Assembly (NCBI GenBank): GCA_036785375.1
Contig: JAWMAR010000710.1
Span: forward strand, 682,001 to 746,000
Origin: Leucoraja ocellata
Taxonomy: Eukaryota
DNA length: 64,000 nt
Direction of reading: 5' to 3'
Part shown: positions 28,673 through 46,085 of the stretch, in pieces
Numbering within the stretch: the stretch's first letter is position 1
Layout: each line of letters opens with the position of its first letter
The notes under the pieces: model-generated
What the model was told of the DNA's origin: nothing
Databases searched by the model: none
Seen by the model: the letters and a program-made list of their open reading frames with translations, nothing else
Program-made: the position numbers and the translations under genes

Positions 28673-28793
28673 TTTATTTTTATGAGGTTGGTCATTTTTG
28701 TCTGAGTCTTTTTGCTTCAATAGGTTCAAATTAATATGAACATTATCAGGTGAATGAAGGAAAAAATAAGCACAATATTCGAATATCGGTTGC
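28673..28793 (-). CDS. Gene A terminal exon: SNRYSNIVLIFSFIHLIMFILI* followed by a polyA signal
   Basis: Acceptor region tttgtttcagttcag; phase-1 frame gives 16 mostly hydrophobic residues then TGA (28726-28728); AATAAA at 28673-28678. Confidence 0.65.
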
Positions 28794-31700
28794 CTGAACT
28801 GAAACAAAATATATATGGCCTCAACTAAAGGTGTAAAGTTGTGACTTTAGACCCGGCTGCTCAGGTCTCGGTCATGGGTCCTGTATTGGTCTTGTTTGGG
28901 TAGATATTAATCGTCAAAGTTCGAGACAAAGAGAGAACACTGTTTGGCATTTGTTTTATAAAATAAATCACTATATTTTATACAGCTATTTAAATGTAAT
29001 TATTGGCATCTTACTGCATTAATGTGCAAATTATGTGTGTTCCTATAATAATGTATGTAATAATGTAATTATTTTAGTTACCATAATGTAACATTAATCC
29101 CTATTTTACCTAATTCCCCCTCTCCCTTAAAGTGTGCCTGAGTGAAGAGTGCATTGCATTTAATGCAGTGTTTTGACCTGTGGCGATGAATTGTAATTTA
29201 AACACTTTATATGTGAACATCTGTAACTGAACACTGAATAATATAGATTGTAATAGTGGATACAATGATTTAAAAAAAAGCAGGAGCTTATCTTACTGAA
29301 AGAGAAGCTAATCTTTCTGCAGCCGTCACAGAGAACAAAGAACACAGAGAACACTTACTTTTCTTCTTCTGATAAGAAATTAAAATCTTGGGCTTATTTT
29401 GATGAAACAAACCACAAATCCATTTCCTTCTGTCTGCATCTGCCTTTGGAATAGTCCGCTGTAAAGATTTCCTATCCTGTCTGTGTTCATTAAAATGCTC
29501 CTCTCCAATGGTTTTTCTATCAGTATTGATCCAAACTAGTCTCATTGTCTCAGTGACGTGAGACACAGAGCAGGTCAGGGTAACGTTGTCTCCCTCAGCC
29601 ACTGCATCAGACGGTTCAGCTGTGACTGTGGAAACAAGGACACCACTGGAATTACAAACAGCACCCCCAAATTTCTATTTGACTTTTCAATGTAACTCAC
29701 CTGAATTGATGTAGCCAACATGAAAGGTCACCAGAATTCAAGCACTATTTGCATTCAATGGACTCGGGTTTCTACGATTTTTATGCTGCCTTTGTAAATA
29801 AATTAGTAGAGAAAAAATCTACCAAGCCTCAAAACATAGGTCCCAAACTTTAAAATCACTCATACACACACAGCCCACAGTGTATTAATCACATGCAAGG
29901 ATTCCATTAGATATGGGTACATTGGGGATGATTCAACATATAAAAGGAAACTGTGGAGGCAAGGACAATCTTAAGTACATATAATGGGTTTTTAGTGAAA
30001 CTTTGTTTAAATGTAATAAGTCATTAACCTACCATTACTGTTTAATTGGAACATTGTTTAGTATATATTTAAATTTATATTTAGTGATTTTAAAATGGTA
30101 AACACCAATCACTGGAGTAACTCAGCGGGACTGGTAGCATCACTGGATAAAAGGAATAGGTGACATTTTGTCCAGAGTTGCTGCCAGTCCCGCTGAGTTA
30201 CTCCAGCATTTACTGTCTATCTTCGGTGTAAACAAGCATCTGCAGTTCCTTCCTACAGATATTAAAATGGTTTTGGATTATCACTGGGTTTTTTTTGATT
30301 TGACATGGAAATAGGAATTTCAGCCCACCAACTCCATGCCGACCAATTTTCACCCATTCACGCTAGTTCTATGTGATCACACTTTTGCACTTCCAACACG
30401 ACAGAGGCATTTTTGCAGAGGCCAATTAACTTACAAACCCACACGTCCTGAGAATGAGGGGGAAATCCGGAGCACCCAAAGGAAATCCATATGATCACAG
30501 GGAGAGTGTGCAAACTCCACACAGACAGCACCCGAAGCAAGAGCAAACCTGAGTCTCTGGTGCTGTGAGGCAGCAGATCTATCAGCTACACCACAGTGTT
30601 GCCTATTTTGATACATTTATTTCCATCTGCTTTTATCAAAATGCAAATGCTTTAAAGGATATTTATGACGTATCACAACAAAAAGTGATTTTAAAATGTT
30701 ACCAGTCTCTGGCAGTTCAGAGGAAATGTTTGACTACAGCAACATATGTAAACCTTTAAGGTAAAGCTTTGGTGTGGTGATGGAGAGAAAGAAACATTTG
30801 TAATAATGTGTTTGGTAATTCCTAAAGTGTTAACCTTCTCTCAATGACTTTGGTTTGTTTTTCCAAACCAAACTAAATGGCTTAACAACAGGAAAATAAA
30901 GGAACATTATTTTCTTACCTGTAACTGTGATTAGTTCAATGGTCACATATTTATTTGATCCCATGGAACATGTGTAAACGCCGGCATCTGCTAATCGCAC
31001 AGGGACAATCCTCACACTGAAATTCTTGCCATTCACATTTCCCTCTGTGGTTTCCATTCGATTCCCAAAGTAGCTCCTGTTCACATGGATCGGCTCAGAC
31101 CTGTGAGAATAAGCTATTTCTTTTTCTTGATTCTGGAAATGTTGTGATCTCCAAGTCCATTTGGTTTCACTGAGCTCAGGAGAAGCTTCACAAATCAGGT
31201 CGAGTTCACTGTGATCTGTGACTGAGCGATAAACTGTGTACGTCTTGTTGTGTAAATCTGCAAGAGGGTCAGGAAAAAAAATAATTAGATTTCCACAGAT
31301 GCTGAGATACAGATGTTCTGAGTTTCCACAGGGACAAACCCCTGACTCTGGGATGTCAGCTGGGAGGGCTGCACTGGGACAGGGAAGTCGACTGGGAGCT
31401 GGAATACATCGGCTGCTGGTCCAGGTGCCCATTGTTCAAACAATGTGCAACAAATGTTCAACAAAGTCCATCTTCCCCAGCCACAGACCAGGCAAAGTGA
31501 TGCTGGTGGACTGGAGATAAAAAGCAATCTGTTACATGGCGTTAGGATTCTGTCATCTCTAATGGTCTCAACTATTGTATTTGGCACCTTTGATTTGTTT
31601 GGGTTTTTCATTTGAACTAAAATAGTTAACAATTAATTGTTAATCTTGCATTAACAAGAGATGTTTGATCAAATTTCTCAAGAACCCCAGTATGTTCTAC

Positions 31701-44350: not shown

Positions 44351-45920
44351 TGATGTTCGAGACATTTTTCTGCATAATTGCTGTATGGTTAAACATTAGT
44401 TTAATTCAGAATTTACTTTGTGTCTTAGAGATCTTTTGGAAATTTGGCTCCCAGTTTTTCATTAGGACACTCACTTCATCTTTCACCTGGCATAGAACTC
44501 CTGTAAATAACTCACTGAGAATCTACTTAACATGACAGAAAGTATTTAATTACGTAGAAGAAAATGCCATTCATGGCAACATAACACACCAAAGCTTGTA
44601 GATAATGCTGACAATTATATACTGCCCCTTACATGTTAGATTTTGTTCCTTCTGCCTTTTGATTATCAGCCAGATGTTTTTAACTAAGTAGCACATCACC
44701 GTTTGTCAAAGAAATAAAGAAGCTGCAGAACTATGAAAGACAATAAACCATAAAAAGCATCAGAGCATCACATGGGAAATATGAACATAAACTCATTAAT
44801 TTTGATCAGAAAAGGGATAGGAAATCTTAAAAACAGTAATAAATGCAACCATCTAGTTGTATGAAACCCCCTCGTGTAATTGGATGAATAACGCAACTAA
44901 ATAAGACCTGAAAGCAAACTGCTGGAAGAACCCAGCAGATCAGCTAGGATCTATGGATGGAAATGGTCAGACAACATTTTGGGTCAGAACCCCTCTTCAG
45001 ACTGAAGTAAGAGTTTCCAGATTAGTTTGAAGAGATACATGGTGCAATAGTGAAAATCAAAATAGTATGACATTTTAAAAAAAGATAAAAAATAGAAAAT
45101 ACCAGAAACACAAAGATGATCAGACAGAATCTGTAGAAAAACAAGAAAAGTTTTAGGTCTTAAACTCTTTATCGGAACATAAAGTGCTGGAGGAACTCAG
45201 TGAGTCAGACAGCATCTAAGAACAGGATGGACAGGCAATATTTCAGGACAGGTTTTTTTTTGTGTTTTGCTCTGCAGGAAGGACCAAGTTGATATGATGA
45301 ACCAATCTAGTTAATACATTTTAAGATGGGAATTTAGAAAAAGACCAACAAGGAAATATGTATGAGCTGTGTAATACAGGTCAGGTGTATAGGAAATATT
45401 CAGCAGATTAAACATTGTTACAGGAGTGAGAAAAACATAGAGTCAATATTACAGATGGATAACTTATAGAAGACACCGGCCCTTTCTGACACAAACAGAA
45501 AACATGAGTTACCTGAAATTATTGAATTTGATGTTCAATCCAGAAGCTTGCTTGTGTCCAGATGGACAATGAGATGCTGTTCCTTAAGCATACACTGGGC
45601 TTTGTTCACAATGAGGGCATTTGGGAGAAGCCAAATGCAGATTGATGACCACTCTTTGGACCCCTTGGCTCAGACTGAAGGATATCCCAGGACTACAGTT
45701 ACAGCCTTTTTAGTTCTCCTGTCCATCAAGGCATTTCCTGCTTGTATCTAGTGGTTGCAGTTTTCTGATTTTTGGTCAAAAAACTACAAGATCTTTAGAT
45801 TCCGTTTTCAGTTTCATTGACAACATCCCTTTGAAATGAAGTGTGACTGCTAGCAGTTCACTTGTCTTATGGTGAAGAAGTTCAGGGACTAGATCAGCAA
45901 AGTTCCAAGCACAGACATAC

Positions 45921-46085
45921 CTAAACTGAGCTTCTCTGTCCCGCTCTACACAGAACAGTTAAAGCAGTTTCACATGAAACCAGAACAAACAAACTTCCTC
46001 TTCATTTTCGGATGGTTCATTCATCGTTGATATTGAATGTGGCTGAGCAAACAGAGGCAACCCCAGTTCAAAATAGGAAGTGATC
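45921..46085 (-). promoter_or_regulatory. Putative promoter and non-coding exon 1 of gene A
   Basis: Donor TTTAG|gtatgt at 45921/45920; ETS/PU.1-type motifs GAAGAGGAAGT (45993-46003) and AAATAGGAAGTG (about 46071-46082); aligns with 16870-17080 upstream of gene B. TSS not determinable. Confidence 0.5.

What the first reader, a model, noticed from the sequence alone, without database searches (positions are those of the whole stretch)
28673..46085. Intact 8-domain CD4/LAG-3-like receptor with a doubled ectodomain and no signalling tail
Seen: ten coding exons splice in phase 1 into an open frame of about 858 aa: signal peptide, then V-C2-V-C2-V-C2-V-C2, then a hydrophobic end. D4 (WRC) and D8 (WIC) carry WxC in the F strand, and the V-to-C2 linkers (LITVKVTAEPSDALTEGDNVTLTC) resemble the CD4 D1-D2 junction. 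Established: CD4 and LAG-3 typically have V-C2-V-C2 ectodomains with WxC in C2 domains, bind MHC class II, and signal through cytoplasmic motifs (CxC Lck clasp in CD4; FxxL and EP repeats in LAG-3). Inference: this is a lineage-specific CD4/LAG-3-related molecule twice the usual length with no cytoplasmic motif, possibly a long-reach decoy, adhesion or pathogen-binding receptor. It is not claimed to be the CD4 ortholog.
Basis: partly seen in the sequence, partly recalled or inferred. Interest (0 to 1): 0.9.

Follow-up and report, generated by a model that had tools for sequence, protein, structure and literature searches.

The report
Eight-domain activating immune receptor gene
This is an intact skate or ray gene for a very long cell-surface receptor made of eight antibody-like domains, shaped like the T-cell proteins CD4 and LAG-3, and it probably switches immune cells on through a partner protein as one member of a large, unstudied shark and ray receptor family.

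Summary
The eight Ig exons are real. They lie on the minus strand, are all phase 1 and have intact GT-AG sites, giving V-C2 four times, with WxC only in D4 and D8.

The leader is at 42649-42565 and the last exon at 28037-27919. That last exon encodes a transmembrane helix with a buried lysine and a 9-residue tail. The model is 875 aa, collinear end to end with an 875-aa sawfish RefSeq protein at 71-84% identity per exon.

The doubling is neither lineage-specific nor unique. Proteins of 840 aa or more from this family occur in 19 shark and ray species. Domain trees place all C-half domains but one in a single clade, so one duplication predates the shark/ray split.

Most relatives carry long ITIM + YxN tails. 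This gene belongs to the rarer lysine-TM, short-tail class, so an adaptor-coupled activating receptor is more likely than a decoy.

Predicted folds of two homologues match CD4 and LAG-3 best among four-domain structures. Sequence evidence is ambiguous, because PD-L1 scores higher with one profile. No CD4 or LAG-3 tail motif is present.

RNA reads were too sparse to show splicing.

The scan noted similar eight-Ig genes elsewhere in this genome (s1-884629, s1-884723, s1-884649).

The parts
42565..42649 (-). Leader exon: ATG at 42649, 28 codons plus 1 base, donor GTAAGT
   Evidence: It is 19/28 identical to P0081 residues 1-28. blastn shows similarity to the paralogue's leader region (42517-42695 vs 11911-12091).
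40992..41324 (-). D1 exon: V-like domain with no cysteine, phase 1
   Evidence: No Pfam hit. 80% identical to P0081 32-139. A profile of this domain type finds only 38 proteins among 1.84 billion.
38446..38715 (-). D2 exon: C2-type, Cys pair, FVC rather than WxC
   Evidence: 79% identical to P0081 141-229.
35886..36221 (-). D3 exon: V-type, Cys pair
   Evidence: 78% identical to P0081 231-341.
35547..35807 (-). D4 exon: C2-type with WRC
   Evidence: 73% identical to P0082 349-434.
33022..33366 (-). D5 exon: copy of D1, no cysteine
   Evidence: 90% identical to Amblyraja P0088 407-519. Lies in the single C-half clade.
32170..32442 (-). D6 exon: copy of D2, second Cys replaced by Trp (YTW)
   Evidence: 88% identical to P0082 549-638. 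The Trp is nearly invariant in 29 eight-domain proteins.
30919..31257 (-). D7 exon: copy of D3, V-set
   Evidence: Pfam V-set E 2.9e-10. 87.5% identical to P0093 636-747. Lies in the single C-half clade.
29359..29625 (-). D8 exon: copy of D4, WIC
   Evidence: 71% identical to P0081 749-835.
27919..28037 (-). Last coding exon: stalk, TM helix with central Lys (IWIIIVSSYLFLKLIVAFGLICCL), 9-residue tail KGIKRRNNS, stop TGA at 27921-27919
   Evidence: 25/34 identical to the C-terminus of P0081. tblastn hits from P0003, P0008, P0011 and P0081 fall only here.
28673..28805 (-).
   Evidence: Sequence read. No homologue matches it. No RNA data were laid here.
6865..12037 (-). Neighbouring paralogue, not part of this gene: leader exon about 12037-11954 and D1 exon 7206-6865. 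The rest lies beyond the window start.
   Evidence: Its D1 is 98% identical to Leucoraja erinacea P0121, a 603-aa four-domain protein with an ITIM tail.

Best explanation
The locus is one intact ten-exon gene on the minus strand, spanning 42649-27919. It encodes an 875-aa type I membrane protein: signal peptide, eight Ig domains arranged as four rigid V-C2 rods, a transmembrane helix with a central lysine, and a 9-residue cytoplasmic tail.

It belongs to a multigene family found across sharks and rays, with four-domain relatives in a chimaera, sturgeons, paddlefish, bichir and bowfin. Databases label these proteins only as 'uncharacterized'.

The doubled ectodomain arose once, before sharks and rays split. 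Most family members have long tails with two ITIM-like motifs and a YxN motif and are presumably inhibitory. This gene is the counterpart type.

Inferred, not shown: its buried lysine pairs with an acidic residue in an ITAM-bearing adaptor of the DAP12/FcR-gamma kind, so that ligand binding activates the cell.

The membrane-distal V domains D1 and D3 are the fastest-evolving and are the likely ligand-binding end. D5 and D6 are the most conserved and probably act as a stalk or spacer.

The fold is of the CD4/LAG-3 kind, and the family is probably a distant branch of the CD4/LAG-3/G6F-like group. The gene is neither CD4 nor LAG-3. The ligand is unknown.
For: Gene model:
- All exons are open, and 9 of 9 introns are GT-AG (plus the TM acceptor read).
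- Leader and C-terminus match the two ends of P0081, a sawfish RefSeq protein of exactly 875 aa. Seven of the eight Ig exons list P0081 among their best eight hits at 71-84% identity, collinear. D6's best eight hits do not include P0081. A single tblastn HSP from P0081 spans D3 and D4.
- No family TM, tail or leader-like exon lies in the 2180-bp D4-D5 intron.

Family:
- The D1-type profile finds 38 proteins at E<=0.001 among 1.84 billion.
- 65 proteins match at E<=1e-10, including forms of 840 aa or more in 19 elasmobranch species.
- 42 of 100 classified proteins have two D1-type domains about 400 residues apart.
- One is a non-RefSeq GenBank entry from nurse shark (AGQ17915.1, 916 aa, eight domains).

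One old doubling:
- 27 of 28 C-half D1-type domains form one clade, with support 98/94.
- 23 of 23 C-half D3-type domains form one clade, with support 99. Sharks and rays are both inside.

Paired types, among 100 proteins:
- 54 have at least one ITIM-like motif.
- 12 have the (Y/F)LxVK lysine TM.
- 4 have an arginine TM.
- The lysine TM motif recurs in sturgeon and bowfin relatives.

Fold:
- The P0008 model has pLDDT 81, with strands 132-147 and 336-350 running through the V-C2 junctions.
- Foldseek ranks LAG-3 at 1-2 and CD4 at 4, 5, 7 and 9 of 350,542 chains.
- VIA ranks CD4 at 1-4 (Z 17.8-15.7, 298-331 residues aligned). D3-D4 superposes on CD4 D1-D2 at 3.2 A over 174 residues.
- The P0081 model shows eight domains, four such continuous strands and a TM helix at 841-871.
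- The family profile A6 places LAG-3 at ranks 3-5 of PDB sequences and aligns the WxC.

Conservation: mean pairwise identity is 50.7% for D1 and 55.7% for D3, against 71.7% for D5 and 76.8% for D6.
Against: - No transcript evidence for this gene. In four RNA runs the exons had depth 0 to about 1. No exon-exon joint was reported. The reads on D5 carry 4-5 mismatches and so come from a paralogue. One run had nothing on any exon. Only 5-25% of each run was read, and the tissues are unknown.
- The sequence link to CD4/LAG-3 depends on the profile used. With the eight-domain profile A8, PD-L1 and CD276 come first (E 6.7e-10), while CD4 and LAG-3 are ranks 14-15.
- Exon-pair profiles give only generic Ig hits.
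- No CD4-specific Pfam family is hit.
- With the eight-domain model, long multi-Ig chains outrank LAG-3 (rank 11) and CD4 (rank 12).
- WxC is missing from D2 and D6.
- Adaptor pairing is inferred from the lysine alone. No adaptor gene was examined.
- The folds are of homologues, not of this gene's own joined product.
Confidence: 0.65

Rival explanations
1. The family is an ordinary IgSF V-C2 receptor family, closer to B7/PD-L1/CD276, CEACAM or nectin-like proteins. Its CD4/LAG-3 likeness would then be a shared or convergent domain arrangement rather than specific kinship.
For: With profile A8 the best PDB sequences are PD-L1 (6.7e-10) and CD276, ahead of CD4 and LAG-3. Exon-level profiles hit PD-L1, PD-1, MXRA8 and pIgR. 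Sources name some members CEACAM5-like, VCAM1-like or obscurin-like. WxC is lacking in D2 and D6. CD276 also has a V-C-V-C form; this last point is recalled and comes from no call.
Against: For the four-domain model, LAG-3 and CD4 take the top fold ranks, and CD276 (which is in the PDB) is not in the top 50. Continuous G/A strands cross all V-C2 junctions, a rarity that Takizawa 2023 (section 3.6, read) cites as a CD4/LAG-3 feature. WxC is conserved in D4 and D8. Profile A6 aligns D3-D4 to both LAG-3 V-C2 pairs, including WxC.
Confidence: 0.25
2. The family is the cartilaginous-fish counterpart of G6F / teleost G6F-like, a thrombocyte receptor with four Ig domains, YxN and an ITAM. This gene would then be an expanded, doubled member acting in haemostasis or thrombocyte biology, not lymphocyte or myeloid recognition.
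For: G6fL has four Ig-like domains, a TM and a tail with YxN and an ITAM (Hughes 2012, PMC3528668, passages read). Family tails carry a conserved YxN: YSN or YAN in elasmobranchs, YDN or YEN in sturgeon and bichir. The language-model and structure neighbours of P0038 and P0081 include g6f-like and LY6G6F clusters at 0.94-0.96, beside CD4.
Against: No G6F or G6F-like sequence could be fetched, so nothing was aligned. Atlas scores are leads only, and CD4 clusters score the same or higher. No ITAM was seen in the family tails examined. ITIM-like motifs dominate. A large paired multigene family is unlike the G6F-like gene as I recall it.
Confidence: 0.2
3. One reading: the product is a tail-less decoy or a GPI-linked or secreted long-reach molecule made by splicing D8 to the acceptor at 28805.
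For: A pyrimidine-rich AG acceptor and a short hydrophobic open frame exist at 28805-28673. Some family models end without a TM (13 of 100).
Against: No homologue has a C-terminus like that frame. The 28037 exon matches the exact end of P0081 and the TM of shark relatives. Models without a TM may simply be incomplete predictions.
Confidence: 0.08
4. Two separate four-domain genes, or a silent or decaying gene copy.
For: RNA depth on the exons is near zero and no joints were seen. Every Ig exon is phase 1, so phase alone cannot prove joint use.
Against: No leader-like, TM or tail exon lies between D4 and D5. All ten exons are open with intact splice sites. The collinear 875-aa sawfish protein and 42 of 100 relatives have the same double layout. 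C-half domains are the most conserved part of the family. The nurse shark GenBank entry has eight domains in one chain.
Confidence: 0.05

Closest known systems
Uncharacterized protein LOC127569165 of Pristis pectinata (XP_051869512.1, P0081)
   Same: Both are 875 aa. They share the same leader, eight collinear domains, the same lysine TM helix and the same short ...KNS/NNS end. The N-half domains pair with it in both trees.
   Different: Identity is only 71-84% per exon. The C-half domains of the window gene sit closer to skate proteins (84-90%), so strict orthology is not shown. It is a computer-predicted protein with no described function.
CD4 and LAG-3 (CD4/LAG-3 family)
   Same: V-C2-V-C2 units, WxC in strand F of the second C2 domain of each half, a continuous strand joining V to C2, and a glycine at the D2/D3 hinge. 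They are the best fold matches for the four-domain homologue. Family features were taken from Takizawa 2023, sections 3.1, 3.2 and 3.6.
   Different: Eight domains instead of four. No WxC in D2 or D6. D1 and D5 lack cysteines. No Cx(C/H) or (F/Y)xxL(D/E) tail. It is a large multigene family with ITIM and charged-TM members. The sequence signal is weak and profile-dependent. No CD4-specific Pfam hit.
G6F and teleost G6F-like (G6fL)
   Same: Four Ig-like domains in the basic unit, a single TM and a YxN motif in the tails of family members. Atlas neighbours include g6f-like clusters.
   Different: This gene has no YxN and no ITAM. Family tails carry ITIM-like motifs. The paper that describes the CD4/LAG-3 likeness of G6F-like (Ohashi 2010) was not held, so that point is recalled.
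Paired activating/inhibitory Ig receptor families (KIR, LILR/PIR, SIRP, fish NITR and LITR)
   Same: Clustered paralogues with like ectodomains. Some have ITIM tails, others a charged TM residue and a short tail. The membrane-distal domains evolve fastest. An ITIM-type paralogue lies in the same window.
   Different: The domain type (CD4-like V-C2 rods) and the eight-domain length differ. Adaptor use is untested. The comparison with these families is from general knowledge, not from a call.

Membership tests
CD4/LAG-3 family | V-C2-V-C2 ectodomain | tested here: met
   Present twice. Exon order and Pfam types, models of homologues.
CD4/LAG-3 family | WxC in strand F of both D2 and D4 | tested here: not met
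   D4 has WRC and D8 has WIC, but D2 has FVC and D6 has YTW. The same holds family-wide: YxC in D2 and YTW in D6.
CD4/LAG-3 family | Continuous beta-strand from V strand G into C2 strand A (rod-like V-C2 pair) | tested here: met
   Seen in predicted models of homologues only: strands 132-147 and 336-350 in P0008, and 128-143, 330-344, 533-546 and 736-751 in P0081. D3-D4 superposes on CD4 D1-D2 at 3.2 A over 174 residues.
CD4/LAG-3 family | Tail motif: Cx(C/H) for CD4 or (F/Y)xxL(D/E) for LAG-3 | tested here: not met
   The tail is KGIKRRNNS. Relatives' tails carry ITIM-like and YxN motifs instead.
CD4/LAG-3 family | Genomic position beside LAG-3/CD4 and their conserved neighbours | not testable with these tools
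CD4/LAG-3 family | Significant sequence similarity to CD4 or LAG-3 above other IgSF proteins | tested here: inconclusive
   Profile A6 puts LAG-3 at ranks 3-5 (E 1.5e-12) and CD4 outside the best 60. Profile A8 puts PD-L1 first, CD4 at rank 14 and LAG-3 at rank 15. Exon profiles are generic.
G6F / G6F-like | Cytoplasmic YxN followed by an ITAM split over two exons | tested here: not met
   This gene has neither. Family members have YxN with ITIM-like motifs, and no ITAM was noted. Feature taken from PMC3528668.
G6F / G6F-like | Sequence or profile similarity to G6F-like proteins; thrombocyte expression | not testable with these tools
   No G6F-like sequence could be obtained. Only Atlas neighbour lists are available. 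The tissues of the RNA runs are unknown.
Paired activating/inhibitory Ig receptors | Related ectodomains with either ITIM tails or a charged TM residue plus short tail, in one cluster | tested here: met
   Of 100 proteins, 54 have ITIM-like motifs, 12 a Lys-TM and 4 an Arg-TM. This gene is Lys-TM, and the paralogue in the window matches an ITIM-tailed protein.
Paired activating/inhibitory Ig receptors | Physical and functional coupling of the charged-TM form to an ITAM adaptor | not testable with these tools
   Needs co-expression and co-precipitation experiments.
B7 family (PD-L1, CD276) | IgV-IgC pair with best sequence and fold matches to B7 members | tested here: inconclusive
   The sequence test is met with A8. 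The fold test is not: no B7 member is in the top 50 for the four-domain model.

The most novel reading that the evidence does not exclude
This family may be a surviving image of the ancestral state of the CD4/LAG-3 group. In that state, a clustered, rapidly evolving set of paired V-C2-V-C2 receptors (ITIM-tailed inhibitory and adaptor-coupled activating forms) recognised MHC class II-like or other polymorphic ligands. CD4 (activating) and LAG-3 (ITIM-like, inhibitory) would be the two members that became fixed as T-cell co-receptors. The doubled eight-domain form would be a cartilaginous-fish innovation that lifts the binding end about twice as far from the membrane.
Probability: 0.12. Interest if true: 0.85.

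Novelty: new variant of a known kind. Interest (0 to 1): 0.55.

Why it matters
CD4 and LAG-3 are central to T-cell help and checkpoint control, and their origin is unclear. Cartilaginous fishes are the oldest living group with both.

This work points to a large family, present across elasmobranchs, that has a CD4/LAG-3-like fold, a fixed doubled ectodomain, and both ITIM-tailed and lysine-TM members. The papers I could search do not describe it.

If the kinship holds, the family offers an outgroup for reconstructing how the CD4/LAG-3 pair of opposing signals arose. It would also add a new paired-receptor system to shark and ray innate or adaptive immunity.

For this gene in particular, the corrected model changes the prediction from 'decoy' to 'activating receptor'. 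That prediction can be tested directly.

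Tried and rejected
**Exon-pair PDB profiles.** Profiles A1-A4 against PDB sequences gave only generic Ig hits or none, so they did not help place the family.

**Searches for named relatives.**
- Pfam on exons and on nine homologues gave no CD4-specific family.
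- The search for homologous proteins with sturgeon P0034, and with the mixed profile A6, returned only 'uncharacterized' proteins and no g6f-like, CD4 or LAG-3 names. In one search only 8000 candidates were scored.

**Leader search.**
- blastn of the upstream region against the paralogue's upstream region gave mostly repeats. It did include the 42517-42695 / 11911-12091 match that later proved to be the leader.
It shows a short acidic open frame without a signal-like core, and I rejected it in favour of 42649-42565.

**D4-D5 intron.** A hydrophobic open frame at about 34798-34700 has no homologue match and no RNA depth. I rejected it as a TM exon.

**RNA.** One read-laying run on 30850-36300 with four runs (X8, X11, X12, X15 of 24 listed) gave repeat-dominated coverage and no exon joints. 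The D8-to-TM junction and the 28805 acceptor were not covered, because the single call allowed at most 6000 letters.

**Literature.**
- Searches found no paper on this family, on G6F in sharks, or on the nurse shark 'obscurin-like' entry.
- Ohashi 2010 was not held.
- The main text of Venkatesh 2014 has no mention of 'obscurin'.
- Its supplementary notes, and the supplementary files of Takizawa 2023, were not opened.

**Circular permutation.** I considered the idea from an earlier scan note. The four-domain model aligns collinearly with CD4 domains 1-4. D3-D4 is simply the better-conserved V-C2(WxC) pair, so no permutation is needed.

**Subsets used for the trees.** The trees used hand-picked subsets of the 126 fetched proteins: 45 proteins giving 72 domains plus 3 window exons, and 37 proteins giving 58 domains plus 2 window exons. 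Partial models and near-duplicates were left out.

**Joined product.** Its exons were searched one by one, and the database proteins P0008 and P0081 stood in for it.

Full report
**What is in the sequence**

The window has no N and no soft-masking. On the minus strand, between 41324 and 29359, lie eight open stretches. Each is bounded by a pyrimidine-rich AG acceptor and a GT donor in phase 1. Their order is:
- a cysteine-free V-like domain (D1)
- a C2 domain with a Cys pair (D2)
- a V domain with a Cys pair (D3)
- a C2 domain with WRC (D4)
- then the same four again (D5-D8)

The two halves are 50, 54, 49 and 53% identical at the protein level, so this is an old duplication and not an assembly artefact. 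Pfam sees only generic Ig, Ig_3 and V-set families, and sees nothing in D1 or D5. WxC occurs only in D4 and D8. D2 has FVC, and D6 has lost the second cysteine (YTW). The quoted V-to-C2 linker is there.

**The ends of the gene**

I searched all 1.84 billion representative proteins with a profile of the D1-type domain (D1, D5 and a third copy at 7206-6865). It returned only 38 hits at E<=0.001, so this domain type marks a discrete family.

It encodes RLLANIWIIIVSSYLFLKLIVAFGLICCLKGIKRRNNS followed by a stop.

A scan for ATG exons with a hydrophobic core and a phase-1 donor found MRSQLGSNIPATLKLHFFFLLFPSVFTQ/GTAAGT at 42649-42565.

Both ends match the exact ends of one database protein, P0081 (XP_051869512.1, 'uncharacterized protein LOC127569165', Pristis pectinata, 875 aa):
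- leader: 19/28 identical to residues 1-28
- tail: 25/34 identical to residues 842-875

P0081 is among the best eight hits of seven of the eight Ig exons, collinear at 71-84% identity. D6's best eight hits do not include it. A single tblastn HSP from P0081 spans D3 and D4.

The ten exons sum to 2628 nt, or 875 codons plus stop. One search reported 2630 with a TM-exon start two bases off, and I corrected that.

**One gene or two**

The D4-D5 intron is 2180 bp. It contains no match to any family leader, TM or tail and no leader-like ATG exon. One hydrophobic open frame there has no homologue and no RNA depth.

Among 100 family proteins that I could classify, 42 have two D1-type domains about 400 residues apart. 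Proteins of 840 aa or more come from 19 shark and ray species. One is a non-RefSeq GenBank entry from nurse shark (AGQ17915.1, 'obscurin-like protein', 916 aa) with eight domains in one chain.

Trees were built on subsets: 45 and 37 of the 126 fetched proteins.
- In the D1-type tree, 27 of 28 C-half domains form one clade (98/94) containing sharks and rays. The exception is a Heterodontus protein whose two copies are near-identical.
- In the D3-type tree, all 23 C-half domains form one clade (99).

The doubling therefore happened once, before sharks and rays diverged, and has been kept since. The single chimaera protein and the ray-finned-fish relatives that were fetched have one cassette. With one chimaera protein I cannot say that chimaeras lack the double form.

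**RNA**

No indexed RNA run holds the stretch. Raw-read RNA runs carrying the same species label exist. I laid four of the 24 listed runs on 30850-36300.
- Coverage is dominated by intronic repeats, with depth 300-1100 at 35218-35399.
- Exon bins show depth 0 to about 1.3 in three runs and nothing in the fourth.
- Bins over D3 (35946-36300) are empty in all four.
- The reads on D5 carry 4-5 differences each, so they come from a paralogue.
- No exon-exon joint reached the reporting threshold.

Only 5-25% of each run was read, and the tissues are unknown. Expression and splicing of this gene are therefore untested, not refuted.

**The family and the signalling end**

In the C-terminal parts of the 100 classified proteins:
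- 54 have at least one ITIM-like motif, typically IHYGSI and VIYAQI, together with a YxN such as HLYSN
- 12 have a TM helix with the motif (Y/F)LxVK and a short tail
- 4 have an arginine TM (ITRSL)
- 17 have other TM helices
- 13 have none, and some of these are probably incomplete models

The lysine TM motif recurs in Pristiophorus, Heterodontus, Hypanus and Pristis, and in sturgeon, paddlefish and bowfin relatives. That breadth argues for a conserved function.

The window gene is of the lysine type. Among the 42 double-cassette proteins only two are (P0081 and P0003).

The neighbouring paralogue in the window has its leader at about 12037-11954 and its D1 at 7206-6865. Its D1 is 98% identical to a Leucoraja erinacea four-domain protein with an ITIM/YxN tail. 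So an inhibitory-type and an activating-type gene sit side by side. It also means the window comes from that skate or a close relative.

By analogy with KIR, LILR, NITR and similar families (general knowledge, not a call), I infer that the lysine pairs with an acidic residue of an ITAM adaptor. This step is inferred, not shown.

**Shape**

AlphaFold2 on the four-domain shark homologue P0008 (30-sequence alignment) gave mean pLDDT 81 and pTM 0.73, with single long strands 132-147 and 336-350 running through the D1/D2 and D3/D4 junctions.

On the apparent sawfish counterpart P0081 (29-sequence alignment) it gave:
- mean pLDDT 74.9
- eight beta-sandwich domains
- four such junction strands (128-143, 330-344, 533-546, 736-751)
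- low confidence at the D4/D5 joint (428-430)
- a TM helix at 841-871

The picture is four stiff V-C2 rods joined by hinges. The junction codon at D2/D3 and at D4/D5 is glycine in the window gene.

Across 29 eight-domain proteins, the membrane-distal V domains D1 and D3 are the least conserved (50.7 and 55.7% mean identity). D5 and D6 are the most conserved (71.7 and 76.8%). This fits ligand binding at the tip and a conserved stalk.

**Relation to CD4/LAG-3**

For:
- Foldseek with the four-domain model against 350,542 PDB chains ranks LAG-3 first and second, and CD4 at 4, 5, 7 and 9.
- VIA-align re-scoring puts four-domain CD4 structures at ranks 1-4 (Z 17.8-15.7, 298-331 residues). These stand above single-domain matches (Z 14.3 and lower). 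LAG-3 is at rank 14 (Z 12.8, 282 residues).
- D3-D4 fits CD4 D1-D2 at 3.2 A over 174 residues.
- The mixed family profile A6 places LAG-3 at ranks 3-5 of all PDB sequences. It aligns D3(end)-D4 to both V-C2 pairs of LAG-3, including WxC.
- Takizawa et al. 2023 (PMC10768021; sections 3.1, 3.2, 3.6 and 3.7 read) name V-C2-V-C2, WxC and the domain-spanning strand as family features. They also stress how poorly the ectodomains are conserved.

Against:
- With the elasmobranch eight-domain profile A8, PD-L1 and CD276 score best (6.7e-10). CD4 and LAG-3 come at ranks 14 and 15 of 56.
- Exon-pair profiles give generic hits.
- No CD4-specific Pfam family appears.
- The eight-domain model is matched first by long multi-Ig chains, with LAG-3 at rank 11 and CD4 at rank 12.
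- WxC is absent from D2 and D6.
- The tail has neither Cx(C/H) nor (F/Y)xxL(D/E).

I therefore describe the gene as CD4/LAG-3-like in architecture and probably distantly related. I do not file it as a member of that family.

**G6F-like lead**

Earlier scan notes mentioned G6F and YxN. Teleost G6F-like has four Ig-like domains, a YxN and an ITAM (PMC3528668, passages read). Family tails carry a conserved YxN. The Atlas neighbours of P0038 and P0081 include g6f-like and LY6G6F clusters beside CD4 clusters. I could not fetch any G6F-like sequence, so this remains a lead.

**Novelty**

RefSeq already predicts many of these proteins, all unnamed or given automatic names such as CEACAM5-like, VCAM1-like or obscurin-like. 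Six literature searches found no description of the family. Closed supplements of Venkatesh 2014 and Takizawa 2023 may hold relevant remarks. Other first-stage notes of this scan report similar eight-Ig genes elsewhere in this genome, which agrees with a large cluster. I did not check those loci.

**Verdict**

The gene is real, intact and correctly seen as a doubled CD4/LAG-3-like ectodomain. Its ends were misplaced, it is not lineage-specific, and it more likely signals through an adaptor than acts as a decoy. It is one member of an uncharacterised paired-receptor family found across elasmobranchs.

Noticed in passing
window 6865-7206 and 11954-12037 (minus strand): D1 and leader exons of a second family gene. 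Its D1 is 98% identical to Leucoraja erinacea LOC129701489 (P0121, four domains, ITIM/YxN tail). The rest of the gene lies beyond the window start. A 588-aa retroelement-like ORF (3116-4882, plus strand) sits just downstream of the D1 exon.
   Followed up: partly
window 35218-35399 (D4-D5 intron): A short repeat draws RNA read depth of 300-1100 in all four runs, with many strand-switch and back-joints and variable flanks. It is a highly expressed dispersed repeat family, unrelated to the gene's own expression. Similar smaller peaks lie at 31942-32123 and 34126-34307.
   Followed up: no
window 32170-32442 (D6), and alignment A8: The second canonical cysteine of D6 is replaced by tryptophan (YTWEV). 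This Trp is nearly invariant across 29 eight-domain proteins of sharks and rays, so D6 has been a disulfide-less C2 domain since the duplication.
   Followed up: partly
proteins P0065, P0066, P0067 (Heptranchias, Hemitrygon, Carcharodon): These predicted proteins of 1282-1404 aa have three D1-type domains about 400 residues apart. They are either twelve-domain receptors or merged neighbouring gene models.
   Followed up: no
proteins P0070, P0074, P0077, P0079, P0009: A third tail class: a TM helix with an arginine (…LVITRSLVLL…) and a short tail, seen in Mobula. It may be a second kind of adaptor-coupled member.
   Followed up: no
protein P0003 (Heterodontus francisci, 595 aa): Its N-terminal and C-terminal D1-type domains are near-identical to each other and fall outside the N and C clades. 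This is either a recent independent partial duplication or a model or assembly artefact.
   Followed up: no
window D1-D3 versus D5-D7: The N-half exons are closest to sawfish P0081 (78-80%), while the C-half exons are closest to skate proteins (84-90%). This may reflect exon exchange or gene conversion among paralogues, or simply that the true skate orthologue is missing from the fetched set.
   Followed up: no
window 46001-48000: A GC-rich stretch (GC 0.54 against about 0.40 around it) with long overlapping open frames on both strands and proline/glycine-rich low-complexity translations.
   Followed up: partly
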